A DNA stretch of 64,000 nt. Origin: Bispira polyomma. Its lineage: Eukaryota. The notes under the pieces are model-generated. The model did no database searches. It was not told where the DNA came from and was given only the letters and a program-made list of their open reading frames with translations. Made by a program: the position numbers and the translations under genes. The stretch covers positions 4,526,001 through 4,590,000 of the forward strand of contig OZ287761.1 in the NCBI GenBank assembly GCA_965649765.1. The letters are read 5' to 3'. Shown here in pieces: positions 1 to 23,200 of this stretch. Within the stretch, counting starts at the first letter, position 1. Each line of letters opens with the position of its first letter.

Positions 1-111
1 AAGCAGATACTTATAACAAATAGGCTAGTTGCGACCCCTGCCAAGTGCCATTAAGTCAAGTGTCATTAAATGATCGTAATAGGACTAAAACATTGATCCA
101 GTACGTCGTAT

Positions 112-253
112 AAATGTCACAGCAATCAAACCAGGACATGTGCCACAAATAAGCACACGTCTAACGATGCCACATGCTGTATTTATATGGCACTGTTTTG
201 GACGACCACATTAGTGAATGAATATGGATCACAACATGGAGATACACAGTGCA
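112..253 (-). ncRNA. SNORA8: H/ACA snoRNA, SNORA8/ACA8-like, copy 1
   Basis: Minus strand reads hairpin (TGCACTGT...ACAGTGC), H box ATATAA, hairpin (ACAGCA...TGCTGT), then ACA+3 nt. Pockets GTATCT/TCGTC and GGCATCGTT/TGGT complement 18S GACGA-U-C-AGAUAC and ACCA-U-A-AACGAUGCC. Confidence 0.88.
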
Positions 254-593
254 TGCTTCTGGCGGAATCTTAGGGTTTTTATCGAATTTTCCTTAAACGT
301 TTTAGGAACAAACAAAACAGGAAGCAGATGAGGTTTTTAAACAAACATTCGGAAACTTAATCTCTGTATTGCCCCAATATTATTTAAAGCAAATGCTTAC
401 AAGTTATACCCAACTTTATCTCTGCATTGGTGATTCTAACTACTAGGCCACCGCTGCACCCTGATATTATTTAAAGCAGATGCTTATAAGTTATAGCCAA
501 TAGGCTACTGCAGCCCTTGTCAAAGATATCAAGTGAAGTGTCATTATAATGATCGAAATAGGACAAAACCATTGATCCATTGATATGTAGTAT

Positions 594-734
594 AAATATC
601 ACAGCAATCAAACCAGGACATATGCCACAAAATAGCACACGTCTAACGATGCCACATGCTGTATTTATATGGCACTGTTTTGACGACCACATTAGTGAAT
701 GAATATAGATCACAACATAGAGATACACAGTGCA
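594..734 (-). ncRNA. SNORA8: H/ACA snoRNA SNORA8-like, copy 2 (ACA box changed to AUA)
   Basis: Same structure and guides as copy 1; terminal box reads ATA. Confidence 0.8.
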
Positions 735-1044
735 GGTTGTAGGCAGATGCTTTAATTTGGACTCTATGAACTGGTAAAGTACCATTTAACCGACATTACT
801 TTAGTCCCCTAATAGTACACCACATTATGTATGAGCTAAAAGGCCAAGGCCTCATAGCCCAGGTAAACACAGCAACTAGATACTTACAAGTATTGATTCT
901 TTTCTGACTGATTTTACAATGTACATTAACACAACATACAATATTACGCATTACGAACGTTCATACCATCTATAATTCAACCTGGAGTTTCTGAATAGAA
1001 GTTTATTGTAACTAGTGACAAATACTTAGAATCCTTAAAAATTA

Positions 1045-1270
1045 AATTTAGTTTGGCTTTTACATTGCTTTCAACAGCTTAGGTCATATCACAAGGACCA
1101 GGTTTAATATTAAAAGAAACCACTGCTGAAGCCACTGTAATCCACCAACCTACGGCAATGACTTAACAAACTTTTCCACATGAAAGAACAAATGGGATTC
1201 AAACCCACATTGGTGAGAGGCCAGTAATTATTAAACAGGTGCTTCTAACCACTAGGCCACCGCTCCCCAG
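1045..1270 (-). mobile_element. tRNA-derived SINE family B (Meta-domain-like); other copies ~3090-3288, 6225-6435, 10320-10446, 12255-12450, 13035-13172, 16752-16911, 22265-22477, 39770-39912, 43463-43625, 63215-63290 (-) and 54238-54467, 60723-60921 (+)
   Basis: A/B boxes followed by GTGGGAAAGTTTGTC...GGTTTCTTCCACCATT...GCTGTTGAAAGTG, resembling the MetaSINE central domain as recalled. Confidence 0.8.
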
Positions 1271-1389
1271 ATATTATTTAAAGCAGATGCTTATCACCAA
1301 TAGGCTACTTGCGACCCTTGCCAAGGACATTAGGTCTAACAGTCAAGATGATCGAAATAGGACAAAACCATTGATTCAGTATGCATTAT

Positions 1390-1528
1390 AAATGTCACAG
1401 CAATCAAACCAGGACATATGCCACAAATAAGCACACGTCTAACGATGCCACATGCTGTATTCATATTGCACTGTTTTGACGACCACATTAGTGAATATAT
1501 AGATCACAATGTGGAGATACACAGTGCA
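1390..1528 (-). ncRNA. SNORA8: H/ACA snoRNA SNORA8-like, copy 3
   Basis: H box ATATGA (ANANNA kept), ACA box and both guides intact. Confidence 0.87.
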
Positions 1529-1589
1529 TATTGTTGAATAGGCATAGCTAACCATCTATTTTGTTGTACACACACACACACTGCCGCCC

Positions 1590-2040
1590 ACCCACACTCA
1601 CCTTCCACTAATGTAGACACATCTAACAAGGCATCCCCCTGTAAACCCATACAGTCACATACACACAGACAAACCCTGACTCACCTTCCACTAATGTAGA
1701 CACAGCTAACAAAGTATCCTCCTACACACCCACACACACTCACCTTCCACTAAAGGAGAGACACCTAACAAAGCATCCTCCTGTACACATCCATACACAC
1801 CCAGAGACAGACATACACCTACACACACACACTCACCTTCCACTAACGTAGACACAGCATCCTTCTACACCCACACAGACAGACACCCACCCATACACTC
1901 ACCTTCCACTAACGTAAACACAGCTAACAACAAAGCATCCTGCTGTACACACCGATACAGAGACAGACACACACACACACACCCCCACACACACTCACCT
2001 TCTACTAACGTAGACACAGCTAACAAAGCATCCTCCTGCA
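1590..2040 (-). repeat. Tandem array of KPNB1 exon-15 3' end plus donor site (5 extra copies with CA microsatellite spacers)
   Basis: Repeated cactcaccttccactaa(c/t)gtagacacag... at ~1595, 1680, 1740, 1831 and 1897, plus the real junction at 1994. Confidence 0.9.
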
Positions 2041-2218
2041 CACCCCCACTCTTGCCGTCGGCCGAGGTCATCATCTGTAAGAGGGCGGCCATGATGGGGT
2101 CTGAGATTTGGGGAGCATCCGCCTCACTGACCTTCCTCAGGACAGATTGCAAGGTGGCACAGAGTAAGGACTGCAGGTCATTGTACTGGACACGGTCTGA
2201 TGTACTCTGGATGTTGTT
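1999..2218 (-). CDS. KPNB1: KPNB1 coding exon 15 ([24 protein letters not shown]...STLVE)
   Basis: AG/GT bounded, 220 nt; both junctions are tandemly duplicated into the flanking introns. Confidence 0.93.
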
Positions 2219-5200
2219 CTAAGCCAATCAAAACAAAGATTACATTACCATTAACCAATCAATGGACTCCACACAACTGTTTTAAAATACTACAGGGATG
2301 TTGTTCTAAGCCAATCAAAACAAAAATTGCATTAACATTAACCAATGAATGGGCTACACACAAGTGTTTAAAATACTACAGGGATGTAGGCCTAAACAAA
2401 TCAAAAATAAGATTACATCAACATTTACCAATCAATGGATTCCGCACAAGTGTTTATAATACTACAGGAAGTTGTTCTAAGCCAATCACAACAAGGATGA
2501 CATTAACAGTAACCAATCAATGGACTCAACACGAGTGTTTAAAATACTACATGGATGTAGGTCTAAACAAATCACACAGATTAGACAACAAAAGACACAC
2601 AATTGCTTAGATTTATTTATGGTTTAGTTTCGCTTTTAAAACCTTGATGGATTTATTTATGGTTTAGTTTCGCTTTCAAAACCTTGATGGATGTATTTAT
2701 GGTTTAGTTTCGCTTTCAAAACCTTGGTATTATATCACAACATCGGATTAATTGGCTGAGTAAAGCAGTACAATATTTCTTTACTAATGAATCGGTAGTA
2801 TAAATGTCACAGCAATCAAACCAGGACATGTGCCTCAAAAAAGCACACGTCTAACGATGCCACATGCTGTATTTATATGGCACTGTTTTGACGACCACAT
2901 TAGTGCATAAATATAGATCACAACATGGAGATACACAGTGCGTGTTTCTGGCTGAATCTGTGGGTTTTGCTAAATACAGATATGATGTGAACCCTATGCA
3001 GCTAATCAAACTTTCTACAACTTTATCTCTGTACTAGTGAAGAGTAAGATCCAACAAACCACAGGATATTTCATTAATAGTGTGGCAATTAAACGTTAAA
3101 AGGGTTTTACGTCACTTTCAACAGCTTACGTCAGATTTAATGGTTGAAGAAACCAGTGCTGAAGTTTTGTACATCACTGACCTACAGCAAGTAGCTGACT
3201 AACTTTCCCACATAATACAAACCCACAGTGGTGAGAGGCCAGTGATGATGAAGTTAACGCTTCTGACCATTAGGCCATCGCGGCCCCTACATTTTGGCTG
3301 GAGTGGAGTTAACTATAATCGGACTACATATTTGAAATCAGCACTGGAATGGTCACAAGTTTTAGTTGATTTTTATGTACAAGTTAGGTAGAAGACGTTT
3401 GGTTTGAATACGATCTATCAGAAGTCAAAAGCAAGAACCGGTTCGACTGAAAAATGTATAATTCAGCAGAATTTTTGTACAAAATTGTATGGAAACCTTG
3501 AAATCCTTTTATGAACTAATTTAATATATTTTTGTATTGTATTGTACATTTTTCATGCACCTTATTGATGCTAGGCATCTTCTAAGGTGCAACATCAGAA
3601 TCAATCAGCCAATAGAAAAATCGAAAAACATAGCCAGGTCGTAAGGATGAATGCGTCAGCGCCCAGGGAGAGGACTACGGCGGATAGGCGAGCCTGAAGA
3701 GATAGGTTTTAAGCTTTCCCTAAATCCAGAAAGTGTTTCAAGCAGTCTAAGCTCAACTGGAAGGCTGTTCCATAACATAGGGGTGGAGGCCGAGAAGGCT
3801 CTAGATCCAGCCCTCTTGGTGGTTTTTTTAGAGGAAACAGAGTCTTTTTCCCCCTTTTAAGGCTGCTGAAGGAGAGTTTAGTAGCGAGGTAGTGAGAGAC
3901 AACAGCTTTAAAGGTGGTTATGTGCATTTTAAACAGGATCCAATAATAAATAGGAAGCCAGTGGAGTTTCTTGAGGTATGGAGTGACATCAGTACGGACT
4001 CCCGAACGAAAGATGACTCTACATAGTTTTGAATGGACTGCAACTTGTTTATGTGGGACTTATTAGCTCCATACAGAAGAGAATTACAGTAGTTCAAAGC
4101 GGCTTATGCTTATGATAGCCGTTCTGTCCCTTTTTGTGTATTCCGTCATCAAAATAACAGCAAGGAATATCGCTAAAATGGGACAGATTATTCAGCCTAA
4201 TAGATCTTAAGAGTTTCTTTATAGAGAATGCCCAGACACACCCCTCTTTTACCTCCATCTGTAGGACTCTCTGTAACCTCTCCAAGATCACCAGGGTGGT
4301 CTTCTGCACGGTGACGTAGCAGTCTTTGGGACTGTTTTTGACTAATTCCATCAGCGCTTCATACGCTGCGCTTCTTAGGTTGTGCTGGTTACCGTCGGGT
4401 CTGCAATGGGTAAACAGTAAAGCTACAGTTATATTTACAGGAACTATGTAAAACCAATCTATAACACCAATGGCAATGTCCACAGGACTCGATCATTGCT
4501 GCTAAGTGTATTCTTTTTTAATTTGAATTTAAGTTCAGTTTTATGTTGTTTTCAACAGGTGAGGTCATATACCAAGTTGTACAGAACCCTAGAAACAGAA
4601 TAGAAATGAACATTTTTAAAACAGTAAAACATGCTGTAGGTTAAGTGGTTTATAACGTTCAGATTACCTGTCAGTGGCGTCCAACAGTTTTTGTACAATA
4701 GGTTCAAAGTATGAGGACAGACTATAAGTATCTGGTTCGTCACTTCCGTCCGGAGTTTCAGCCGCTTCAAACGCCGCCTCTGCCAGACTGGAGAATGCCT
4801 TGAATGTAAAAACAGCAAAATATATTAACCATAAGCTTTTACTCAAAATGTAGCAAAAAAAAATTGTTTTTCCTATTGTTTTATACTAAGCTGCCTTTTC
4901 TATTTCATAAAAACTTGTATTATCTGAACAAACTTATCATATGATTAGGGTCCTGGTAAGAGCCAGGACTGAACAATTGGTTGACAAGTGGAAGAACCCA
5001 AGCTGGGTGGTGTAAAATGTAAAGTCGGATGAGACCTCAATAGAGGAGATATCAGACTATATAAACTAAAACACACAAAACTATACACATCTTACTCAGG
5101 GGCATAGACTCATTGGAAACTGAAGGTGGCCAGTAGGGCCAGTAACTTTTACACTTTAGTGGCCCTTATGAAATTTTCTAATTCTGATACACCATTACGG

Positions 5201-8200
5201 TACCCATGATAAAAAAAATCAGGACTATTTAGAGTAAAGAATCTAAAATTGGCCACTGTACCTGAAATTGGCCACCTCTAAAAGTTGAGCCAAATCAATA
5301 AAAACTGGTGAAATATAACTGGAATGTGGTTAAGTAAGACTAAATAGTCACAAAAATCTAGATTTTAGCAAATATTACCCACAATTCTACCAAAAACACA
5401 ACATTTTCTAGGCGGCACTCCCCCACTGTCACTGAAAAAGTGGGGGAATGTAATTTCAAATGGGGGACAAAAGTAAGCAATTTAGCCAATATAAAAATTT
5501 ATCAAATAAAAATGGCTTATATTATTCAAAAAGTATATTGGAAGTAGATCACACCATATATGCTGTCTGATATATACATCTGATGTGCAATACAAAAAAA
5601 CGAAAACTTCCCCTTTATGGTTGCTAGGGTTTGAATAAATTATACACTGTTTTTATGTGGTAACAAATGCACTCGCTAGGTGGCGCTTGGAATTCGCTAG
5701 GTGGCGCTTGGAATTTGCTAGAAGAAAGCTAGTCGTTGATTGGTTGTCACAGGACAACTCCTTGATTTTAAACCAATGAAAATGTAGCAGACAAACAGCC
5801 ACTGTAGTTTAATATTTTAGAAGCTGCGCAGAGTAAGATATTTTGGTTGTTTTGTTTACAAATGGCCGAATCCGCGATTGAAGGAAATGTTATCAAATAA
5901 AGCCGATAAAAGGTATTTTATTGCATTAAAACGTTGCAGGACACGTGGACTTCGAATGCTGTATATCGCTCACGAAATGAAGCAATAAACATGCGTTTTT
6001 TATTTGGGTAGTGGTTTCGTTTAGCGATCGCGAAAACGGGAAGTAAGCAAACTTCTTCGAGAACGGCTTTCGTCTTTTCGATCTAAATCGCCAGCCGGGC
6101 GACCCCGAAATACGTTTTACTCGTCCTTATCAGAATAAAGTCGCCACTGGCGAGTTGGCGACTGCAAATTTTTGCCCCTGTCTTACTCTCCCAATGTTTT
6201 TTGGCCCAATATGTCAATTTAAATTCAGCTTTTAAGTTTAAACAGCTTTGGTCTTTTCATGAGGGCCAGATTAAATGATGGAAGAAACCAGTGCTTAAGC
6301 CACTGTAAACCGACCGACCTACGGCAAGTACCCCGACAAACTTTGCAACATAAAGGAACAAGTAGGATTCGAATCCACATTGTTGTAAGTGGACAGTGAT
6401 TGTAAAACAGGCACTTCTAAGCATAAGGCCACAACAACCTCTTTTACCGTATTTAAGACTTTAATATTTTGACTTTGTGGAAAGGCAGCATTAGGTCATC
6501 TATATATGTTGCATTACGAGTTTAGGCAGGAGTTTCTCACCCAGCAGACTTTTGCGGGCACATTTTTTCATAAGACTTCAAATTTCAGGAAATTTTGAAA
6601 TAAAATCACAAGAATAGTCTTAGACAAGAGGAAAGTGACCTTGCGGTCACAAATCTCGGAGACATGTATCTATTTTACAAGCTGTCTACCAAAAAGTAAA
6701 CCAATATTATCTGTCAATGTATAACTTACAACAAACAAAATATCTGTCTACCTATAACCTAAAATACAATTGTTAATATACAAGTTATAGAAAAGGAAAT
6801 TATTCGACAACCTTTTTAAATATTAAAAAAATATTATCTGTCTACCTTTCAACCTGCCTACCTAAAAGTAAAAAAAAATTAATCAACTGTCTATCTGTCG
6901 ACATGTCACCATGTAACCTAACAGGTCGACAAGTTAAAAAAAATTTTTTTTTAATTTTTTGATTAAAGGTAATTTTTTTATGGTTTAGGGTTGGAGTTTA
7001 GGGGAGTTAGCCATCATTCTTCAGCCTAAATATCTCTTGCACTTAAATTTAGGGTTTAGGTTTAGGGGAGTTAGACATCATTTTTTAGCCTAAATATCTG
7101 TTACACATAAAGTTAGATATAATCCCCTAACCCCTTAAGCCTAAAATAATTTCGACCTGACAGCTTATCTGTCTTAAATAATTAAAAAATTAGTCTACCT
7201 TTCGACCTAACTACTTGTCCAACTGAAAAAAAAATAAAATTTCTACCTGTCTACCTGTCGGCCTGTTTTTTTTTGTTAACCTGTCGACCTGTCTACCTAG
7301 AAAAATATATATATGTTTTTTGTCAACCTGTCAACCGGTCTACCTAGAAAAAAAAAAAAAATTTTTTTTGGTCAACCTGGGGAAAAAAACTTCTGCTTGT
7401 GATTATAATTCGGCCGCCTATTGTAAATCAGCCACCATACAATAAATGTGTCATAACTTTAGTTAAATTAAATGAATTTATCTAACAATACCATGCTTTA
7501 TTAAATATCAGTATTTTAATTGTTTTACTTCAACCCTTCGATCCTGCCCCCCCCCCCCCCCCCAAATTAAATAGTCCTGGGGGGGTGGGGGGGGGGGGGG
7601 GAGGAGAAACCCTATTTCAAATACTATATATAATCCTGTTATACTCCCCGAGAGTTATTACAAACGGCCATCATTTACGAAGAAGCGTGTACGTCAGCAA
7701 TTCAATGAATGAATATAGTTTCTAAAAGCAATATATTGCGATATGAAATTTAAAAGCAAATACGTATCGATACAGTATTTTCACTATAAATCCTTTTATT
7801 GTCGCTCACTTCTGGGTCGCGTTTTAGACGAAACATCGCCTCGTGTGTTAAATATAAGATATTATAGTGAGGGAGGAAGTTCTGAACGCCGAGTACCCCA
7901 TAAAACGCACCAAATATGATGAGAATATAGGCGAAAATAGAAAGAGTTCACAGACTTTGCTTCGACTCGTCTGTTAATAAAATATATTCTAGCGAGATAG
8001 GAAGTTTTGAAAGCCAAGTACCCAACCGAATTTCCCCCAAAGTGATGACGTCAACACAAAAATGGCGAGAAATGCTAGTACCTAGTAACTGAATACTTAA
8101 AAAAAAGAAAAAAGCCTGTAGTGTGGCGCCGTCTGGCGGTCAAAACCAAAGTTAAAAGGGGTGCGTTTTCGCAAATTAGAATCAAAATGAGAAAAAATAA

Positions 8201-11200
8201 ATTTACCCGTCAGTATTGGTGTATATATATCGTATATATATCCCAAACCCAAGTCTTTGTCACATATATATACCTATTGAAACCTACGAATCTGACCCTA
8301 CGAAAAATAGACAATATGCGGTAATTGGGAGGTCAAAGGTTAAATCTTATTTTACAAACAAAATAAAAAAATAAATACATATATTAAGGCTTCTGACTCG
8401 TCCTTAGTACCAACCACATATAACTGCCAAAAACGGACTTAAAATAATGGACGAAACTGGTAGAAAGTGTTGTCTACAGACCAAAAACATCTTCTCAATA
8501 CATGATCTCGGATGGCTCCGCTCTCCGAGATAAAAAAAAAGACTAAGTGATTTTTTGGTCGTCATTGAGGTAAACTAAATGAAATAGCGTTAGTGAGGAT
8601 AAGGTAGAGTATTTATCGCAATAAAATGACATTTTTATACATTACCTGGACATGTTTTTCCCTTCGTTCATATATGTACATTGCCTTAAAATTGGTGGCT
8701 TTGAATTTGAATTTGGATATTTAACGTCCACTCTAGTACCTTTTAGTAGGTTATATTGGGACGGGTAGTTGGAAATGCTGGAGGAAAAACTGCATACAGT
8801 CGGTCAAAGTTCTGCAGAGAAACCAGCGGCCCACAGTAAGGAACTACCACCTTTCCCACATAGGCATCAACGGGATTCGAACTCACACCGCCCAGAGGTG
8901 AGAGACCAGTGATTGTGAAGCGCAATGCTTGCTAACCACTAGGCCACCGTGGCCCCCTTTAAAATTGGTGGCACTTTAGCAGGAAATTTGATGATTTTTA
9001 ATGTAACTACCTAAACGATAAGGTGAATTCTATGTACCCTTTGATATGTCAATTTTAAAACTATAATCAAGATACCTAAACTTGCACTTTTCCTCGATGA
9101 GATCATGATATCGCGATACGCAATGACAACCATACCTTCAATAAATACAGTAGAACCTGTATTTTACGAACATCCTGGGAGAGTGAGAATCTGTTTGATT
9201 AATAGAAGGTCCGTAATAAAATAAAAGTGGCATTTTAGTATAAAACAATAGAAAAAATATGTCTGGAAGAGTGAGTTTGTAAAATCAAATTATTCGGATA
9301 ATAGAAAGGTTGGATAATAGAGGTTCCACTCTACCCATATTCCCAAGCCGTTTCTTACCCAGCAGACGTTTGCCGCTACCCGCGCCTCCGCTTGCAGACC
9401 TTCCACCAGGGCGTGCAGTAGCGTGTTCAAGTTCTCGTTAATGACGGCCTCAGGTAAAATCTCACAGACCCGGCCCACCGTCCAGGCGGCTGTGTCCCTT
9501 ACGATGACTGACGGGTCCTTGAGTAATTCCATCAACATGGGCATGGCCTGGTCTACAATGGGCTTCAGCTTCTCTGTGCTGGGACCTTCCAATATGGAGC
9601 CTGAGGAGTAATTGAAACATTATAACTAAAACATTTAAAGAGCGCAAAATTGATAAGAACATCCTTTAAGGCACTGATATCATAAAAGGAAATCTCCAGG
9701 GGGCCAAGCAAAAGGTCCTGTTACCAAAAACCATCCACCAAGGAAAGGGTGACTAAAGGAGTGGGGGGTGTGCAACTTGCACCTGTACATTCAAGATAAG
9801 TCTTAAATTTAAATTTAGTTGGGATTTTACCTCACTTTCAACAGCTTTAGGTCATAGTAATGACCAGACCGTATTATAATCGGATTACCGGTCTGTAAAA
9901 GTAAAGGTAGCAAATTCCTGCTTGAATTGATGTACAAGACACAGTAGGCACTACAAATTTAAAATATCAACACTACTTACGTTAATTTCATTGTGCATCA
10001 GATCAACTTTCCAAAAGTACAGTATAAAACTTTAAAATCTCACATGACAGGTATTTTGCAGGTAAATATTATTGGCAGCCATATTAGATATCAATTCAGT
10101 ACTAAAAGAGACTTTGTAAAATGTGTACATTTAAATTTCTGTGATTTACTTAATTTTATATTGGCAAGTATAAAATTTTGAATGAATTATGTTTATTAAA
10201 AAACGAAAAGTTACAAAAGTGTGATTTTTGAAATCCAGTTTCGAAAGACATACTCCAAATAGAATGAGGGCATTACGGTCGGTGTTTCGATTACCGGAAT
10301 ACCGTTCACTATACTAGATCATAAATACGATGATCAGATTTAATGGTGAAAGAAACTAGTGCAGACGTCACTGTAAACCTACGATAAGTACCCGACAAAC
10401 TTTTCCACATGAAGGAACCCAAACTAGATTAGAACCCACATTGGTGAATGTCACAGCAATCAAACCAGGACATATGCCACAAAAAAAGCACACGTCTAAC
10501 GATGCCACGTGCTGTATTTATATCGCACTGTTTTGACGACCACATTAGTAAATAAACAGATCACAACATGGAGATACACAGTGCATTTTTTTCCTGAATC
10601 TATTGGTTTTACTAAATACAGCGACGTGAACCCAATGCACCTAATCAGACTTTTCTTTAGCAAGTCTACGGACAACTGCCTTAAGCTCACTGGACGCAAA
10701 CTTTTTCTTTTTAACGATCTCGAGTTATAATATAATATCTGAAATGAGATATCCAACAACTTTGTAGCCATAAATCACTTTATCAAAACATTAATTAAGG
10801 TCTACTAATTTCCAATACTCCCCCACATATTTGCCTTTATTTTTCAATAGATTTTGTTTTCCACAGCCTAGCCTGGTTTCTGAGATTGGTGCATACTAAA
10901 TTTGCAGGTACCTAGATTCTAAATAGTTAGATGCTTGCAGTTACTTGGGCCGTATTTTTTGTGCCCGTCTCAACACTATTATTTTTTTAAATTCCTTTTT
11001 CTGTAACAAATGTATTTACCAAATGCCATCACGGCTGCGTCTCTAAATTTCCAGTCTGTATTTTTGATGTTGACGGTGATGAAGGCCATCACTTGGTCTA
11101 CGATATCGTCTTCGCAACAGGTGGCCATCAACATGAGGCAGACGCCCGCAGCTTTACATGGATTCCATTCGTCATCGTCATCATATTCTTCCTGTGTAGA

Positions 11201-14200
11201 CACGCACGGGGGACAGTTAAACATAGTAACAAGAGTTGTCTTTTAAAAAAAGACACATGCGCGCAGTGTGAAATACATTTACGTTGATATGGCCACTATA
11301 CACTCAGGCAAATCTGACATCACTTAGTTTGAATGGGTCGATTGCTTCCAACCAATCCATAAAGGCCTTGCATATTATAGGCCTTTTCAAAGATGGCATT
11401 TCAAAATTAAAACAATATCAGGGTGCACCTGATAAAATGTTAATTGAATTTGAATTTATATTAAATGTACAAATGTCACAGCAATCAAACCAGGACATAT
11501 GCCACAATTAAGCACACGTCTAACGATGCCACATGCTGTATTTATATTGCACTGTTTTGACGACCACATTAGTGAATGAATAGATCACAACATGGAGATA
11601 CACAGTGCATCTTTCTGGATATAATCACAATCTGGTGTGCAACTTAGAACTAGAATTTGATTTACCGAAATCATCTTCGGAAGCGCCCGATCTCGCATTA
11701 TCACCCACCCCCCCAAAATGTCCCAAAACACCCAATTTTACACACAAAAAGACGTACCAGAAGTGATATATATATTATTTACCTAATAAAAACTACTTTC
11801 CTTTGTTTAATACATCCATATTATATTTTTTTAGTCCAGTGTTTATAAAGTAAACAAACCACATAGTTTTTGGGGTATTCATTTTTGGTATGATGCTGTT
11901 TGCTGGCGTCCTACATCAAAACAGTCTATGCTCACGTAAACGCCCACCCCCAGGTTCACTCCAATTTCTATGTACCGCCCAGTGGGCGCTTCTGCGGATG
12001 ACTTCGATATATTAAATGTACAAATGTCACAGCAATCAAACCAGGACATGTGCCACAAGTAGGCACAAGTCTAACGATGCCACATGCTGTTTTTATATTG
12101 CACTGTTTTGATGACCACATTAGTGAATAAATATAGATCACAACATGGAGATACACAGTGCATGTTTTTGGCTGAATCTGTGGATTTTACTAAATACAGG
12201 GATGGGAACCCAACGCATACTACATTAATAGTATAGCAATTAAATAGTTGAATTTGAATTAAGTTAAATTTTACATCACTTTTACTTTCAGCTTTGGTCA
12301 TTCCTTAACAACCAGATTTAATAGTGGAAGAAAAAAAAATTTTAAAAAATAGAGTACTCAAGCACTGTAAACCACAGACCAACAGCAAGTACCTGACAAA
12401 ATTTCTCACATGATCTGAAGGAACGAACGGGATGCTTTTCACCACTGGTAATATTTTGATTATTTTAGATTTCTTAAATGCACGACAGTAGTGGTAACAC
12501 AAGAAGTTCTACTGTACTGAGAGAAAGTATGGTTCAAGACGTACCTGTTTTGTGAGTGACATTGTGAGGACTGGTATGAGGTACTGTAATGCTCCTTTTG
12601 CGTAGAACCTGCTGGTTCGTTCTGGAGGTCTGCCGCCCTCTTGCGCCTGGATACACAAACAAAACAAAACCACATATAGTTCTCCACAGACTGACATACA
12701 CATAGTTTTTTTTTTGTTATTTGGGATATTTTAACGTCCACTCTAGTACCTGTTCAGGTTATATTGGGATGGGTAGTTAAAAACGCTGGAGGAAACACTG
12801 CATACAGTTGATCAAGGTTCTGCACTGAAACCAGCAGCCCACAGTAAGGAACTACCACCTTTCCCACATAGGCATCGACGGGATTCGAACTTACGCCGCC
12901 CAGAGGTGAGAGACCAGTGATTGTGAAGCGCAATGCTTGCTAACCACTAGGCCACCGCGGCCCCTATACATGTAGTAAGAGAACAGCTAAAACCTTGGCA
13001 GCGCGCAGTTTGTACCTGTAAATTGTCTGTTTAGTAAGGGGTTTGTGTCGCTTTCTGCAGCTTATGAAAGTGATATCACAATAGCCAGATTCAATGGTGT
13101 ATGAAACCAGTGCTTAAGTACTTTAAACCACCTACCCTACGGCAAGTACCCGACAAACTTCCCCACATGAAGACAGGAACACCCCTCTTTATCTGAGATG
13201 ACATGGTGGAATATGGTAAAATAACCCACCATAAGATAATGGTGTTGTCAAATAAAGTACACACTCACAGAATAAACGTTCAAGACTTATTTATACAAGA
13301 ATAGTCTCGACACAGTTTTGGTGGAGGAAACCAGTACTATTTCTATAGAAGACAAGTATCCAGCAAACTTTCTCACTTGAAGAAAGCACAGGTGAGAGGC
13401 TAGTAATATTAAAACAGACGCTTTACGCTCAGACCTTACGTCAGCTCTGACGATATAAGTACAAATGTGACAGCGATCAAACCAGGACATGTGCCACATA
13501 TAAGCACAAGTCTAACGATGCAACATGCTGTTTTTATATTGCACTGTTTTGACGACCACATTAGTAAATATAAATAGATCACAACATGGAGATACACAGT
13601 GCAGGTTTCTGGCATTGACAAGTTCTTTACTCTTTTCATTTTAGTACAAGATTTAAACCAAAACTCAACTATAACTTCCATGTTTATTTTCTTCATAAAG
13701 AGTATGAGATTAGTGGGTAAATTGTTTATCCTTATCACCGATATTTGTCGTTTGGGCTTTTGCGTGCCGATATCGATGTGTAATACAAACACATCGATAT
13801 TATATAGGATACACATTACACCTTGAGACAACATCTATACAACCATTTGAATTATATTTTATGATTGATACCTTTTAAATTATGAATGATAACTATTTTA
13901 AGTCTATTACCGGTAAACATATTTAGCGGTTCTCACTTTCAGTTTCATTGGGAAAGGTTTTTTGTTTTGGAAATACGTTCCAGTTTCTTCACAACTTTCT
14001 TTCTATGTCCCAATATCGACCAATATTGAAGTTATTTTACTTTCGATATCGATCTCCGCCAGCCCAAACGATTTACCCACTATATGAGATAGATAGTGCA
14101 GGTTTGTTTTACAGGGCCATATTCACGGAGTTTTTTAATGGCTTCAACAAATCAGATTGTTCTATACAATTTAGTCAGCCAATCAAATAACAACTTTCAA

Positions 14201-17200
14201 CCAATCAGGTCGCCATAAAATTTGGGTCAGCTTATCAAATGACAACTTTCAACCAATCTGGTCGCCATACAATTTGGGTCAGCCATTTAAATGACAACTT
14301 TCAACTAATCCATCCGCTCCATCCAATTTGGTCAGCCAATCAAAATGACAACTTTCAACAAATCAAATGACACACTCAAGAAATATACCCACGTTACAAG
14401 ATGTCCCTGGACACTCACCTCTGAAGCTTCGATGGCCAAGTCCACTTCTTCATCACAGACAGACGACCAGAACTCTATGCCTTGTAGAGCCACCTCATCT
14501 ATATCAGACTTCATACTCTCCATGGTGATCTAAAGAGACACACGTGTTCAAAGTATATCCCCCTTTGCAGAAAGCTGTGTAACCTTGATGATTTTATTTG
14601 TTTCATATATCTACCATAAATACAACTAGGTTAACAGAGTTGTCATATTTCATTGATTTACAGTCTGAAAAAGAAGAAAAGCTTCACCGAATATAAATAA
14701 TTTAAATGTGTCATCAGTTTGAAATAATTGATGTTTTCGAAGAAATTACTTTTGTTTTGAAAATCACAGATATTATATGACAACCAAATATTCAGTAGAG
14801 ACACACATAGACAGCATACAAGATATCACAGAGACAGTATAAAACCTTGAATAAATTGAATGCCATGAGAGACCCAAGATTTTATTTAGACAATGGGAGG
14901 GTGTTTAAAATACACGGAAGCATTTTAGTTTGAAAAAAAAACACAATGGCCTCTGTAGAAATATAGTAGAACCTCTGTTCTCCAAACACTTTGGGAGAGC
15001 ACGAATTTAATCGGAACATAATAGAATGGTTCATAAAATAGAAAGCGAATTATGGCATGAAACAAATGGGAACAAATATCAAATTTGGGGTGAAAAGGGT
15101 GGAAAATTAGTTAATTTGATTGAATAATCAGAATATAACAGAAAGTTTGATATATATTTTGAAAAGGACAGCAACAACTTACTGCAAAGAGTGCGGGCCC
15201 CATATAATGCTCCATGTACATGTAGTAGAGGGTCATGATCTTCACCAGACACTGTAAGGCTGCCACACGCACCTGTGTGTCTGTGGACTGGGTGGCTTCA
15301 CACACCACTTGCATGATAAAGTGACGCTCCGACTGGAAAATACATATTGAGAGTGTTGCAATCAGTATGCAAAAGAATAGTCCCAATAGCAGAGAAGGTT
15401 CGTGATCAGGAGACGAATCTTTAGGCGGAAAAACTAGTAGGGACGAAGACTAGTGGGTAGACTATTCTAATCACGCGGATTAACATGTATACACTTGGGA
15501 TATTGGCTTATATAATTACAACATTATTTTATCAGCAATTCCTAGTTTCTAGAAAAAAAGAATAAGAGGGGTCCCTTACAGTGAAAATCTTTGTAACTAT
15601 ACTTCCATCAGGATAAAGGGAAAATTAGTAAAGTTACAAAAAATAAGTAACAAGGCTCTCTATTGGAAAATTTTGAGTGAAAATATCAAAGATCCAACAG
15701 CAGTTAATGTATGGATAGATATTTTTCCTTTTATGGAAACAGCACAATGGAAATCCATATTTTTATCAATACAGCATACAGGCATAGTCATATTTGCAAT
15801 CATTTCAGTACAAAATAGTAAATAGAATATTAAATTGCAACTACACTCTTTATAAATGGAAAATTACAGATACATTGGAATATCACTTATACCTTTGTGT
15901 CTATAGCAAAATCTTCTGGGAACATTTTAAAAATTGGATTTTGAGTTTCTTAACGTTCAGTTACAAGGTTAGATTTACAATTTGTGAAATAATGTTTGGG
16001 ATAGGTGCAAAAGAATTTACAAGATTACCTGCAACTGAAAGGGCAGCCAATATTCTTATATTACTTGGTAAATGGTAAGCAAGCATCAATTTTCTCTTTA
16101 TACTAATATATATATGAACTCTGTTACTGAGATAGATAAAGGAACTGAAGGTGTTTTTTTGAATATATTGTACACTGTTAACAGAAATTTTTAATTACTT
16201 TTTGTTATTAGTAGGAGAAAAGGTATTATTATTAAGGTATAAAATATAGCACAGAGATAAGCTACGATTAGTCTTTGTTATCAGTGATTGTGTTTGTAGA
16301 TTTCAGTATAACTCGTCATTGTTTTCATTATTGTCCTCGTCTTTTTGTTTTTGTATTGTAACCATGTGACCCAATAAAAATATTAAACCAGACCACAAAC
16401 CCCAACCACTTCTGAGATCTACTTGTCGACACATATCAGACGATCCTCAAACTAAAGCATACGATCATGTCATACTGACGTCATACGTCAGTATAACATA
16501 TCACCTGCAAAAATTTTAAAAAAATATACACACTCAGTTTTTAACACACTACTTGCATGATAAAGTGACGCTCTGGCTGGAAATACAGTACAATTTGTAC
16601 ATAAAGACCACCCAAGGGAAACCCTAAAAGTTGCATTTATACAGAGGTGGTCTTAATATCGAGGTTGAATATTATTTTAACAATGATTCTTGGGAAATGA
16701 ATGTGTGGTCTTTATACAGAGGTGGTCTCTCAAGCAGGATTGACTGAATATCTTGGGTTTTACATCACTTTTAACAACTGGTCATCTCACAACGGCCAGA
16801 AACATGAGAAACTTTCCCACATGAAGGAACGAACAAGATTCAAACCCACATTGGTGAGATGCCAGTGATTGTAAAGTAGGCGCTTCTAACTACTAGGCCA
16901 CCCGCGGCCCCTGTATTTTCTATGTACAAACATCGAGTTTGAGCTGGAGTCGAGTCTTTAGAGAATATAAGCATCTTCATCTTCATACTCTTCCATTCAC
17001 ATTGAACAGTAAAGTTCACATAATCCTAAATTGGCTTACAAAAACAAGTCGTATTTATCATAAAAACACTTACCTCTATATCAAAATTTGCTCTTGTAAA
17101 TTCTAAGGAGTTCAACATGGCATTTGTTGCGGCTAGACGTACGTGATTACTGAAATAGACGAGAAAGTAGTGTAAGAGACGGTAGACCGGATACCTACTT

Positions 17201-20200
17201 ACCGACCGTATGCGGCTGAACCGGTTCCATTTGATTGTACATCAGTAAAAACCGGTTTTACCTTATATATATACTAATCACATTAAAATAAAACGTAACC
17301 ATGTACTTTTTTTACATCTGTTCCTATAATTCAGCACAATTTGCAACATTAACTCACCTTTTTTATCTATCGCAAAACAGGAAATGAGTATACAAATACA
17401 GTACTTGTATGGAAAACACAAAGCTCTCCCTATATTTATCCTATTTGTGACGCAACAATTATACTGCAATCTGACGTGATTTAATTCTCAATTCGTAATT
17501 ACTACCTCACTCTGACGTCCAATAACTGAAATTTAAATATACTGGTTTAATGTTTTAGTTTAAAATGGCTGAAAATAAAAAAATTGTAGACAATCTAAGT
17601 GCTAGAAGCAATGCTTCACAGGTTTGGAAAAATTTTGGCTTTTACTTAGGTGTAGACAACAAGCCTGACAAAACCAAAGCTATTTGCAAGCTTTGCTTTG
17701 CTGAAAAACCTTATGTTGGAGGATCAACTTCTAATTTGAGAACACATTTAAATACCTACCATAGTAGTGAGATAAAAGTGCCTGAGAAAAAAAATGAACT
17801 ATCTACTATTACTCAGCATTTTGCAAAACTTGCTACTAAGTCTATGTCGAAGGATAGTAGAGAATACAAAACCGTTACCAGGAAGATAACACACTGGATG
17901 ATTACAGATCTAATGCCCCTATCTACAGTAGAGAAACCTGCATTTAGATCAATGATAGAGTCTCTTAACCCAAGATACACAGTTCCCTGTAAGGATACAA
18001 TCACTAACTGTATCATACCACAAATCTACAATGAGGTTAAAACCAAAGTGGGGGAAGAAGTAACCAACTACAACAGTTTTGCATGTACTACTGATGGGTG
18101 GACCTCAGCTGCCACAGAAAGCTATGTTACAGGTATGTGTAAATGGTGAATTTCACACCAAATTTCAAATTAAAATTTACTTTAATTATCTCTCACAAAC
18201 AAAACTTGAGCTTATCCTAATATCCTTCAAGTTGAAACACTAACTTATATTATTTCAGTTACCCAGCATTACATTGATGTCAACTGGTCTGTGAAGAGTG
18301 TTGTGCTTCAAACCCGCCAGCTTTCGGATTTTCACACAGCTGAGACCCTTGCAAATGTCCTTAAAAACTGTTTCATTGAGTGGGGTATTAATGATGCCAA
18401 TATTATTGGGGTAACTGATAATGCTAGGAATATATTGAATGCATGGAACGACCATTTAGATAGGACAAATATTCCCTGTGTTGCTCACACATTGAATCTT
18501 GCTGTAAGTAGAGTTCTTAAGATCGGCAGTGTTGCCAACATTCTTGGCCATGTTCGAAACTTGGTGTCACAATTTCATTATTCGACAAGCTTAGCAGCTA
18601 AACTAAAGGCAAAACAAAGCCTTTTGAAAATGGCTCAAAACAAGCTCATGAATGATTGTCCTACAAGATGGAATTCCAGCTTTGATATGTTGACTAGAGT
18701 TTTAGAACAACAGCTGGCTATTTGTGCCGTTCTAGTTGAAACCCCAAATAAGTTGAACCTCAGTTTAGAAACAAAACAAGTTAAAACAATGGAGGAGCTC
18801 TGTTGTTTGTTAAAACCAATCAAAGACCTCACTGTTAAGCTTAGTGGCCAAACCTATTGTACTAGTTCCATTGTACTTCCTTCAATCCAGAAGCTCCTAA
18901 ATGTCCACCTTGCTCAGGATGAAAATGACTCAAAATGTATGAGAGACTCAAAACTGGCCTTACATAGTGACCTGAACAAGAGGTATACCGATCCAAATAT
19001 TAGAAAACATTTGCTTGCATCCTCCTTTTTAGATCCAAGGTTCAGGTAGTTGTCATTTGCCTCTGTCCAAGAATATGAGGAGACAAAAAAATTTGTACAA
19101 GCTGAGGTTGTTCAATGTGAGAAAAAGTCAAAAATGATAGGGACCCAGATTGCCCAACCCATACCCCCATTACAGGTAAAACAAGAGTCAAGTTTGGCTG
19201 CATCTCAATCTACTGAGACCCCTGACCAACCAATTTTGTCAGAATTGTCTGAAGATTCCATAAATGTTGTGTCTGTTAAAAGGGAATTGGTTGACCCTGA
19301 TATACCAACTGAACATGAGATAAAAAGGCTCAAAATTGGCGAGTGCTTTGATCTTGTTGTGGAGTACAAATGGGGGTAGACAACTCCCCAAAAGAGAGGG
19401 CTCAGAGTGAAATAGACAGATATTTATCTGAACCATTGGATATTCAGTTAGTGAAAGACAAAAATTTTTCTGTACTACAATGGTGGGGTACTCATGACCC
19501 TTCTTATCCCATGTTGGCAAGAGTAGCTAGAGAATTGCTCTGTATTCCTGCAACTTCAACACCCTCAGAGAGGGTGTTCAGTCTAGCAGGTAACATTGTT
19601 ACAAAAAAACGAAGTTTGCTGTTGCCTGAAAATGTGGACAAGCTCATCTTCTTAAACACGAATAAAGAATATCTGGACTAAAATGACTTTCATGATAATT
19701 AATGAACATTCCACAAAGTGGTTATTTAAGGCTATAATGGAAAATCTTTGTTTGAAAAGTGACAACTTCTTTGTCTAAATTTCTAAGTTTGTTCAGAATA
19801 TTAATTCATATAATGTGTCAAAGTGCTGAATAAAATATGTTGTCTTGAATTTGTGTGTTGTCCCCTGTGTCCTAATATGCTCTCTACCTACCCAAAACAT
19901 TTCCTATTAAAAACTGGATTACCTTACCTGAACTATAAAAATGTTACTTCCATACCTTAACACAAGAACCAAGAGGAGAGATTTATTGTTTTCCATAAGT
20001 ACCTGAAATCAACTTTATAAGTAAACTTACCTGATGGATTTAACACAACAAAAGCAAGTTTTCTGGACAAAATGTGAATGAGGTAAGTAAATAATATGTA
20101 ATCTTTGTTGTATTTAGCACTTTAATGAAATGTGATGATTATTATTACAAAACGTATACGTTTTTGGACTTTATTACGAAACGTGTACTTTTTTCGGTGA

Positions 20201-23200
20201 AACCGGTTTTTCGTTCGAAAAGTTAATTCGGCAACCGGTTTTGAAAATTCACACCAACCACTACTCACACCAACCACTACACTACGAGAAAGTACCGTAA
20301 TTATAACTTCAGTAGTGAATTTCCTTTATAAACCGAAGTCATATCTATATTTAGAGGCGAGAAATTGCTTTTTATTGACTTTGGACAAAAGGGTTTGTGC
20401 CTACACTTTTTGTTGTCGGCTAATGTCATCCACAACATTGTAAAAAAGAAGATCCCAGCAGTCCATCCATCTTACCTGGGCTCCTCCTTTTTCATTCCAT
20501 GTACTATAGCTGTGAGGATGTCATTGGACTGAGGCTGCAGGACTTCTGGCTCCTACAAACAACATACAAATGCAAATTTGAGGGTACACTAAAAGGTTAT
20601 TTTATCTTATTATCTCAACTTCTGTTATCCGAATATTTGATTTTATAAACTAATTTTCACAAATTCAAGTTTGCCTATTGCAGGAATACCTCCTCTATTT
20701 TATGAACCTTTCATTATCCAAACAAACTCTTGCTCTTCAAATATTTATGAATTTGAATTTGGATAGTTAACGTCCACTCTGGTACCTTTTAGTAGGTTAT
20801 ATTGGGAGGGGTAGTTGGAAACGCTGTTAGAAACACTGCATACAGTTGGTCAAGGGTCTGCACTGAAACCAGTGGTCCACAGTAAGGAACTACCACCTTT
20901 CCCACATAGGCATCGACGGGATTCAAACTCATGCCGCCCAGAGGCGAAAGACCAGTGATTGTGAAGCACAATGCTTGCTAACCACTAGGCCACCGCGGCC
21001 CCTGCTCTTCAAACATGTTTGGATAATAGAGGTTATAGTGTACTTACAACATCGGGAGATTCCTTACATTATCCCGAAATCTCTAACTTTATTTTACTAT
21101 TAACTGCAATAGTTACAATATCCTGACAGATATAACTTATTTTACCACTATTTGTAACTATTTTTTATCAATACTTACAATATCCTGACAGATATAGCCT
21201 ATGGCCTCCAGTGAAGACTCCCTCATCATTTCAGTACTGGCCGGGTTGGTCACATTCTGAGTCAATGACACTATCAGCTCGGGCCAGAAGCCACCGGGCA
21301 ACTCTGCACAAGCCATATAAGCCACACACTGCGCTGCAGAGCTGGGACGTACAGTCTCTGTGCCCAAGGTCTCGAGTACCTGGAAATATCAAACAAAGAA
21401 AACTTAACCTAGATTAAAATTTATACACAGCCATACGGTAATTCTGCACATCAATATAAGTCACACACTAGGTGTATGACACGGCCCCCCCTCGATTACT
21501 CGATAACAGCCTCCGTTTCTTTGGAAACTGACGTTTGGGAACTCGAAAACATGTACATTTTACAGTTAAAATCTATTACATTATCGCCTATTATCCTAAT
21601 TCACTTTATGCAACACAATAATCTTGTTTTAATTGTTGCAGCTAATAATGTACATTTTCCTCCCAATTACCAATATTCCCCCATTCACATAGTTGCTATT
21701 TTTTTTCCCAAAGATTTTGCTTACATCAGCCGCCATATTGCTAGACTGGTTTCTGGGATTGGTTCATATTAATGCATGGCTATATAGATATAAGACGGTT
21801 AAGACATTTCCGATAACTTGGGCCGTATTTTGGGGGGCCTCATCCACCCCTAGTTTGTAAATTGTTCAAAGGGTATTAATTCTATTTGCTGTATTGCTCG
21901 TTGTTGTTGAGCGCATACATGACAAAGCTTCACTTACATTTTTCTTGATATAAATCCGCACATCCTCGGGAAAGGTCAGCCACCTCTGTCGATACTGTAA
22001 CTGCAGGGTATTTTCTTTTGAATAGAGTGCATTTTTCAACTGGATACCTGTCAAAGACGAGAAGATCCAATTTATGACATGATGCTGACTACACAATCTA
22101 CAGTGGAACCTCTATTATCCAAACTTTGTATTGTATCCCAATATTCTACTTTTATGAACTCAAATTTACTCTGCCAAATTTATAGTTTTCTATTACATTT
22201 TTCGATCTATTTTATGAACATCGTATTATCTAAACAGATGTTCATGCTCCGAACATAATTGCATTTGAATTTAGCCGGGTTTTACAATCACTTTCAACAG
22301 CTTGGGTCATATCACGAAGGCCAGATTTTAGGCTGGAATAAACGAGACCTGAAGCACTGTAAACCACCAACCTAACAAACTTTCCCACATGAAGGAACAA
22401 ACAGGATTCAAGCCCACTTTGGTGAGAAACCAGTGATTATTAATAAGCGCTTTTAACCACTAGCCCACTGCGGCCCCTGGTAATACATTGAACACAACCT
22501 CATATCGCTATCGCCACCCTCTTTCAACCTTTTTGAGAAAGGCATATGAAACAGATTATAACAAATAGTGTGCAAGCGCTGTATGTTAGTAGATTTAATA
22601 AATTTACAAAATAATTGGGACACGGTTCCTGTACATACCAGCCTGCATTCGGGCCACAGGACTATTCCCTCCATGTTTTAGGACGTCAGACAACTGCTTC
22701 AATAATTCTGGCTACAATGGATAAAACAACAAGAAAAAAACAGTCAGCCTTTGAAAAAAAAAGCAACATATGTGCCTGTGTATATGAACGTTAACACAGA
22801 ATTCCTCTGCACATCTTACCAAGTTTTGCTTTGCAGCTTCATCCAGATAATTCTGTGCTGCTTCGAGTTCGTTTTTGTCTGAAAAACAAAAAAGATTATC
22901 TCTTCAGATAAACATCACAGAAGTAAGATTCTGATAAATAGAAATTATAGAACCTGAATAATTATCCTACAAAACAAATGTACAGGTGGTTTTTTTTTTT
23001 TCAGTTTTATATGAAAATGTCATGGAAGTATCCCTATATTACATTGTGTATTCCTACCAAAAATAGTCTTTATAAAATATAATATGGTATAGAAATTAGT
23101 ATGGTACATAATAAATGAGGAATGATAATATAGGGGGGGCAGATGAAGAATAGAATCAGTTAGAATCATTCATCGACAAACTTTAACTGACGAATTTTTT

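What the first reader, a model, noticed from the sequence alone, without database searches (positions are those of the whole stretch)
112..13603. Eight-copy intronic array of a SNORA8-type H/ACA snoRNA inside importin-beta, several per intron
A ~140-nt element that looks like an anonymous repeat occurs 8 times, only in KPNB1 introns and always sense to the host. It folds as hairpin, H box (ANANNA), hairpin, ACA-NNN. Pocket 1 (GUAUCU/UCGUC) complements 18S GACGA[U]CAGAUAC and pocket 2 (GGCAUCGUU/UGGU) complements ACCA[U]AAACGAUGCC. These uridines lie 25 nt apart, the Psi1056/Psi1081 pair guided by vertebrate SNORA8, and each pocket starts 16 nt from its box. Boxes and guides are largely kept while loops vary, which suggests selection on most copies. 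Vertebrate SNORA8 is hosted by TAF1D, one snoRNA per intron. Here the host differs, one intron holds three copies (112, 594, 1390) and another holds two (11471, 12022), which would need endonucleolytic or alternative processing.
Basis: partly seen in the sequence, partly recalled or inferred. Interest (0 to 1): 0.85.

Follow-up and report, generated by a model that had tools for sequence, protein, structure and literature searches.

The report
Nine snoRNA copies inside importin-beta introns
A small guide RNA that is predicted to mark two ribosomal RNA positions for pseudouridylation has been copied nine times into the introns of the importin-beta gene, up to three per intron; this is a known kind of arrangement (fruit flies do it) and appears to be this animal's general habit.

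Summary
Observation confirmed and extended. The 140-nt element occurs nine times, not eight: a ninth copy lies 3.3 kb before the window. All are sense in KPNB1 introns. One intron holds three copies, one holds two, four hold one. It folds as hairpin, H box, hairpin, ACA. Its pockets pair 6+5 and 10+4 bp with this genome's own 18S at two uridines 25 nt apart, each about 16 nt from its box. The core is about three times more conserved than co-duplicated flanks, and changes concentrate in loops. It is not a MITE or SINE. Rfam SNORA8 is the best family match but stays just under cut-off (37.3 vs 38 bits). Two defective paralogues sit in tandem in an alpha-actinin intron. The surprise is smaller than claimed: Drosophila H/ACA snoRNAs are generally in intronic clusters, and chicken KPNB1 hosts snoRNAs. 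The scan found the same packing before on other DNA of this genome (s1-585851), and I confirmed it for U14 (4+2 copies in two RPL7A introns). How several snoRNAs are released from one intron is untested; no RNA run was found.

The parts
112..252 (-). snoRNA copy c1, 3'-most of three in one intron; 1-nt insertion after pocket 1 (17 nt to H box)
   Evidence: fold z -2.7
594..733 (-). snoRNA copy c2, middle copy of three; terminal box AUA instead of ACA; guides intact
   Evidence: z -3.2
1390..1527 (-). snoRNA copy c3, 5'-most of three; intact; best Rfam SNORA8 score (37.3 bits)
   Evidence: z -4.0
2802..2941 (-). snoRNA copy c4, alone in intron 4252-2219; guides and boxes intact
   Evidence: z -2.9; opposite strand z -0.5
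10446..10584 (-). snoRNA copy c5, alone in intron 11019-9601; guides intact; its 3' end abuts a truncated dispersed repeat
11471..11608 (-). snoRNA copy c6, 3' member of a pair in one intron; intact
12022..12161 (-). snoRNA copy c7, 5' member of the pair; one mismatch in pocket 1
13463..13602 (-). snoRNA copy c8, alone in intron 14418-12647; most diverged, one mismatch in pocket 2 and two broken stem pairs
1..1998 (-). Window part of the 2667-nt KPNB1 intron with three copies; its acceptor lies 668 nt before the window. A ninth copy (c0, C14:4522642-4522779) lies three introns further downstream, outside the window
11192..12544 (-). KPNB1 intron with two copies (GT-AG, 1353 nt)
1999..2218 (-). 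KPNB1 coding exon upstream of the three-copy intron
4253..4400 (-). KPNB1 coding exon
4668..4798 (-). KPNB1 coding exon
9359..9600 (-). KPNB1 coding exon; best PDB match importin beta-1, E 5.5e-33
11020..11191 (-). KPNB1 coding exon
12545..12646 (-). KPNB1 coding exon
14419..14529 (-). KPNB1 coding exon upstream of copy c8; the gene continues to a probable start near 23507

Best explanation
The element is a double-pocket box H/ACA snoRNA related to SNORA8. It most likely guides dyskerin to pseudouridylate two uridines of 18S rRNA (U1012 and U1037 here; the human Psi1056/Psi1081 pair by spacing and context). It was multiplied in cis by short DNA duplications that carried some flank, with later exchange between copies, and purifying selection keeps most copies intact. 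Shown: copy number, intron placement, fold, box and pocket geometry, target complementarity, constraint on the core. Inferred: that RNA is made and modifies 18S. Single copies would mature by the standard route (splicing, debranching, exonuclease trimming up to the bound proteins). In the two- and three-copy introns the most likely route is an endonuclease cut in the unprotected spacer followed by trimming, as intronic clusters require. I put that step at about 0.55; it is inferred, not shown.
For: Nine close copies in a 1.04-Gb genome, all sense in one gene. Fold z -2.3 to -4.0 on the host-sense strand and -0.5 on the other. Pockets give 11 and 15 paired positions at the two uridines, next best anywhere in 18S is 8. 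Variable columns: 13/21 in apical loops, 10/66 in stems, 2/24 in guides, 1/6 in boxes (P 1e-5). Core differs by 4-6% where co-duplicated flanks differ by 14-19% (P 0.0009-0.03). 7 of 10 stem changes keep pairing against 33-41% expected (P 0.02-0.06). Four double-sided compensatory pairs appear against the C2 paralogues. For cluster processing: all six U14 copies found lie in multi-copy RPL7A introns, 4+2, and no strong cryptic acceptor lies between the KPNB1 copies.
Against: No RNA run holds the locus, so expression is untested. The Rfam score is under cut-off and its 3' end is misaligned. Loops are AT-rich and may mutate faster for neutral reasons. Gene conversion could also homogenise cores. 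For the middle copy alone the core/flank contrast is weak (4/138 vs 9/112 private changes) and it carries AUA. No shared hairpin or other cleavage signal was seen in the spacers. The compensatory pairs come from one paralogue lineage and count as one event set.
Confidence: 0.75

Rival explanations
1. Real snoRNA, but only the four copies that sit alone in an intron mature normally. The clustered copies are by-products of this genome's frequent intronic duplications and are kept similar by gene conversion.
For: The same introns contain tandem copies of exon-intron junctions (1570-1990; L010 7310-8000), so local duplication is frequent. Flanks are mosaic: c1 shares its 3' flank with c2/c3 and its 5' flank with c0/c4/c7. 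Defects occur in clustered copies c1, c2, c7. The tandem pair on C2 is decaying.
Against: c3 and c6 are fully intact, and the most damaged copy (c8) is a single one. c1-c3 together have 10 private changes in 414 core positions against 30 in 336 flank positions. U14 was found only in multi-copy introns.
Confidence: 0.15
2. The multi-copy introns are trimmed only from their ends and give long RNAs capped by H/ACA units (about 1.4 kb from c3 to c1 and 0.7 kb from c7 to c6), like SLERT and other sno-lncRNAs; the units may still guide within them.
For: This is the documented outcome of two snoRNAs in one intron in mammals (PMC11028025). It needs no new enzyme.
Against: Spacers are unconserved and filled with dispersed repeats. 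It explains the middle copy poorly. It would also have to supply all U14 function.
Confidence: 0.07
3. A non-functional local repeat or mobile element that resembles a snoRNA by chance.
For: No Rfam hit above cut-off; no homologue in KPNB1 introns of other animals sampled.
Against: Only 11 copies genome-wide in two genes, strand-specific fold, exact boxes and two near-perfect 18S pockets at canonical spacing.
Confidence: 0.02

Closest known systems
SNORA8/ACA8 (Rfam RF00393; functional homologues yeast snR31, plant snoR5)
   Same: Two-hairpin H/ACA RNA of about 140 nt; same lower stem of hairpin 1 and similar pocket words in the Rfam consensus. ACA8 is listed as homologue of snR31 at fungal 18S Psi996 (PMC2780460). 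Human 18S carries Psi1056 and Psi1081 (PMC6182160).
   Different: Score 37.3 bits, under the cut-off of 38. Human ACA8 is in JOSD3/TAF1D with one snoRNA per intron (PMC2653536); here nine copies are in KPNB1. Pockets here pair more perfectly than the vertebrate consensus appears to; the chicken homologue was listed as an orphan (PMC2653536). The ACA8-Psi1081 link rests on my memory.
Drosophila intronic clusters of box H/ACA snoRNAs (Huang et al. 2004, cited in PMC5932544; summarised in PMC3089462)
   Same: Several H/ACA snoRNAs inside one intron of a protein-coding host.
   Different: In Drosophila C/D snoRNAs keep one per intron; in this animal the C/D snoRNA U14 is also clustered (4+2). Spacers here are 340-660 nt and hold dispersed repeats. 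I could not read the primary papers.
SLERT and other sno-lncRNAs (PMC11028025)
   Same: Two H/ACA snoRNAs in one excised intron.
   Different: SLERT arises by exon skipping between two different snoRNAs; here the copies are paralogues in a constitutive intron. No long RNA has been shown.
Cis-duplicated vertebrate snoRNA paralogues; chicken KPNB1 as host of U32A/B (PMC2653536)
   Same: Intragenic duplication, and the same host gene.
   Different: Vertebrate paralogues go to separate introns; the chicken passenger is a C/D snoRNA.

Membership tests
Box H/ACA guide snoRNA | Hairpin-hinge-hairpin-tail fold | tested here: met
   98.7% of cells paired; z -2.3 to -4.0
Box H/ACA guide snoRNA | H box ANANNA in the hinge | tested here: met
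   present in all nine copies
Box H/ACA guide snoRNA | ACA three nucleotides from the 3' end | tested here: met
   ACA after hairpin 2 in eight copies, AUA in c2; the true 3' end is not mapped
Box H/ACA guide snoRNA | Bipartite pocket complementary to a target around an unpaired UN, about 14-16 nt from the box | tested here: met
   6+5 bp at U1012 and 10+4 bp (plus one G-U) at U1037 of own 18S; 16 nt (17 in c1)
Box H/ACA guide snoRNA | Expressed as a discrete RNA bound by dyskerin, NOP10, NHP2, GAR1, and target modified | not testable with these tools
   no RNA run holds the locus
SNORA8 (RF00393) | Covariance score at or above the gathering cut-off of 38 bits | tested here: not met
   best 37.3 bits (E 0.0011); four more copies 21.5-29.3; none
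SNORA8 (RF00393) | Guides the 18S Psi1056/Psi1081 pair | tested here: inconclusive
   Predicted targets are 25 nt apart as are 1056 and 1081 (PMC6182160). Position equivalence was not aligned to human 18S, and only the first site has a cited ACA8 link (PMC2780460).
SNORA8 (RF00393) | Synteny with TAF1D/JOSD3 host | tested here: not met
   Hosts are KPNB1 and alpha-actinin; host switching is common, so this weighs little
Intronic snoRNA cluster | More than one snoRNA in the same intron | tested here: met
   no coding residues missing between flanking exons, no strong cryptic acceptor; non-coding exons cannot be excluded without RNA
Intronic snoRNA cluster | Individual snoRNAs released from the shared intron | not testable with these tools
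   no RNA data
MITE or SINE | Many dispersed copies in random orientation | tested here: not met
   9 close plus 2 distant copies, two loci, all sense to host

The most novel reading that the evidence does not exclude
This animal lineage has dropped the one-snoRNA-per-intron rule for both snoRNA classes and uses a general endonucleolytic route to release single snoRNAs from multi-copy introns, including the middle copy of the KPNB1 triplet and all U14 copies. That would be a processing pathway not yet defined in animals.
Probability: 0.35. Interest if true: 0.65.

Novelty: new member of a known kind. Interest (0 to 1): 0.36.

Why it matters
The locus adds an invertebrate SNORA8-like guide whose two pockets pair almost perfectly with 18S, which supports the predicted target pair. 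It is also a convenient test case: the same snoRNA sits alone, in pairs and in a triplet within one pre-mRNA, and the copies differ at diagnostic positions, so one small-RNA library would show which positions mature. That bears on how animals process intronic snoRNA clusters, which to my knowledge is not settled.

Tried and rejected
Rfam at gathering cut-off: no hit in the window; Rfam SNORA8 over the whole genome: none. MITE/SINE: rejected on copy number. Assembly artefact: unlikely; contigs from DNA runs bridge the c1-c2 spacer with no differences, though these runs may be the assembly's own source and the c2-c3 spacer was not shown as one piece. Hidden coding exons between copies: rejected. 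Cryptic splice sites and shared cleavage hairpins in spacers: none convincing. A tRNA-like repeat lies sense between c3 and c2 (Rfam tRNA E 0.14) but not between c7 and c6, so tRNA-type processing is not a general explanation. Homologues in KPNB1 introns of other animals: none in 13 partial loci fetched by exon similarity; these are distant, unnamed species. Other snoRNA families in the remaining KPNB1 introns: none. The Huang 2005 and Kiss 2004 papers were not held. The organism was not identified.
Full report
Observation. A DNA search of the whole 1.04-Gb genome returns nine copies, 90-95% identical to the query copy, all within 17 kb; the ninth lies 3.3 kb before the window. A covariance model built from the nine adds two distant paralogues 479 nt apart on contig C2. 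The element is therefore not a dispersed repeat. Contigs from public DNA runs bridge the spacer between copies 112 and 594 without differences, which argues against a false expansion, although those runs may be the source of the assembly.

Host gene. The exon at 9359-9600 matches importin beta-1. A full-length frog KPNB1 maps across the locus, with no residues missing at the introns that hold the copies. GT-AG borders that keep one open frame were found for the twelve exons from 14529 to the stop codon. The intron from 1998 to -668 holds three copies, the intron 12544-11192 holds two, and four introns hold one each. Several introns hold none. Copies lie about 0.3-2.1 kb from the acceptor.

Structure and target. 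Each copy tested folds into two hairpins, with z between -2.3 and -4.0; the opposite strand gives -0.5. All nine have an ANANNA hinge and eight have ACA after the second hairpin; copy 594 has AUA. The genome's own 18S was taken from an rDNA unit. Pocket 1 pairs 6+5 bp around U1012 and pocket 2 pairs 10+4 bp plus a wobble around U1037. The next best site for either pocket in 18S reaches only 8 pairs. Both pockets start 16 nt from their box, 17 in copy 112. The two uridines are 25 nt apart, as are human Psi1056 and Psi1081 (PMC6182160); I did not align to human 18S. Copy 12022 has one mismatch in pocket 1 and copy 13463 one in pocket 2.

Selection. Variable columns number 13 of 21 in apical loops, 10 of 66 in stems, 2 of 24 in guides and 1 of 6 in boxes. 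Where flanks were duplicated with the core, they differ by 14-19% and the core by 4-6%. Seven of ten stem changes keep the pair, against 33-41% expected. Against the C2 paralogues four pairs change on both sides, but these come from one lineage. Two caveats apply: the loops are AT-rich, and mosaic flanks show that copies have exchanged sequence. For the middle copy of the triplet alone the contrast is weak (4/138 against 9/112).

Family. Rfam gives nothing at cut-off. With relaxed thresholds SNORA8 is the top family: five copies match, the best at 37.3 bits against a cut-off of 38, E 0.0011, with a misaligned 3' end. The lower stem of hairpin 1 is shared with the vertebrate consensus. ACA8 is listed as the homologue of yeast snR31 at the first site (PMC2780460); its link to the second site is from memory. 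So it works like SNORA8 and is probably homologous, but it fails the formal score test.

Second locus. The C2 pair lies sense in one intron of an alpha-actinin gene as a tandem 479-nt duplication. Both copies are damaged: no H box at the right distance, a 2-nt insertion before the ACA position, one guide mismatch each, and loss of ACA in one. The one folded has no significant structure. They look like decaying relics.

How it works. Single copies fit the standard route of splicing, debranching and exonuclease trimming (PMC11028025). In multi-copy introns that route alone would give a long RNA with snoRNA ends. I found no strong cryptic acceptor and no shared hairpin in the spacers. I could not relocate that array but tested another family. 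All six U14 copies found lie in RPL7A, four in one intron and two in the next, with no coding residues apparently missing between the flanking exons. U14 is needed for 18S maturation (established knowledge), so this animal probably obtains working snoRNAs from shared introns. An endonucleolytic cut in the spacer is the simplest route, but it is inferred. No RNA run holds the locus.

Comparison and verdict. Animals mostly follow one snoRNA per intron (PMC11028025), but Drosophila H/ACA loci are generally clustered within introns (PMC3089462). Cis-duplication is the usual source of paralogues, human ACA8 lies in JOSD3/TAF1D, and chicken KPNB1 hosts U32A/B (PMC2653536). No homologue was found in partial KPNB1 loci of other animals, but these are distant and unnamed. 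The finding is real and well read, yet it is a new member of a known kind and one example of a trait the scan had already noted in this genome. Its value is as a test locus for cluster processing. Interest 0.36. No contig taken for human was fetched; vertebrate-like exon hits were left alone.

Noticed in passing
window 1570-1998; L010 7310-8000 and 8990-9060; L039 700-1010: Tandem copies of the 3' end of an exon with its splice donor fill the start of several KPNB1 introns and one alpha-actinin intron.
   Followed up: partly
G000:C2:29206044-29206663 (L039 1501-2120, minus): Two diverged, damaged paralogues of this snoRNA in tandem in one alpha-actinin intron.
   Followed up: yes
G000:C9:16399525-16407496 (minus): Six U14 (SNORD14) copies hosted by RPL7A, four in one intron and two in the next; five pass the Rfam cut-off. 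From memory, vertebrate U14 is in HSPA8 and RPS13.
   Followed up: partly
G000:C11:27913798-27942528 and 35540336-35580630: Seven U17/SNORA73 copies at two loci, some about 700 nt apart; intron borders not checked.
   Followed up: no
window 10430-10446: The 3' end of copy c5 joins directly to the inside of a truncated tRNA-like dispersed repeat, having lost the flank shared by other copies.
   Followed up: no
window 17240-20240: A DNA transposon-like element (hAT-type by eye, transposase-like frames with at least one stop, apparent terminal inverted repeats) in a KPNB1 intron, antisense to the gene.
   Followed up: no
L022 8091-8162 and 10424-10490: Weak C/D snoRNA-like Rfam matches (SNORD57 E 1.1, sn1185 E 0.22), sense in KPNB1 introns of another animal; not significant.
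   Followed up: no
window 16544-16579: A short echo of the start of the exon at 15335 (acceptor side) in the preceding intron.
   Followed up: no
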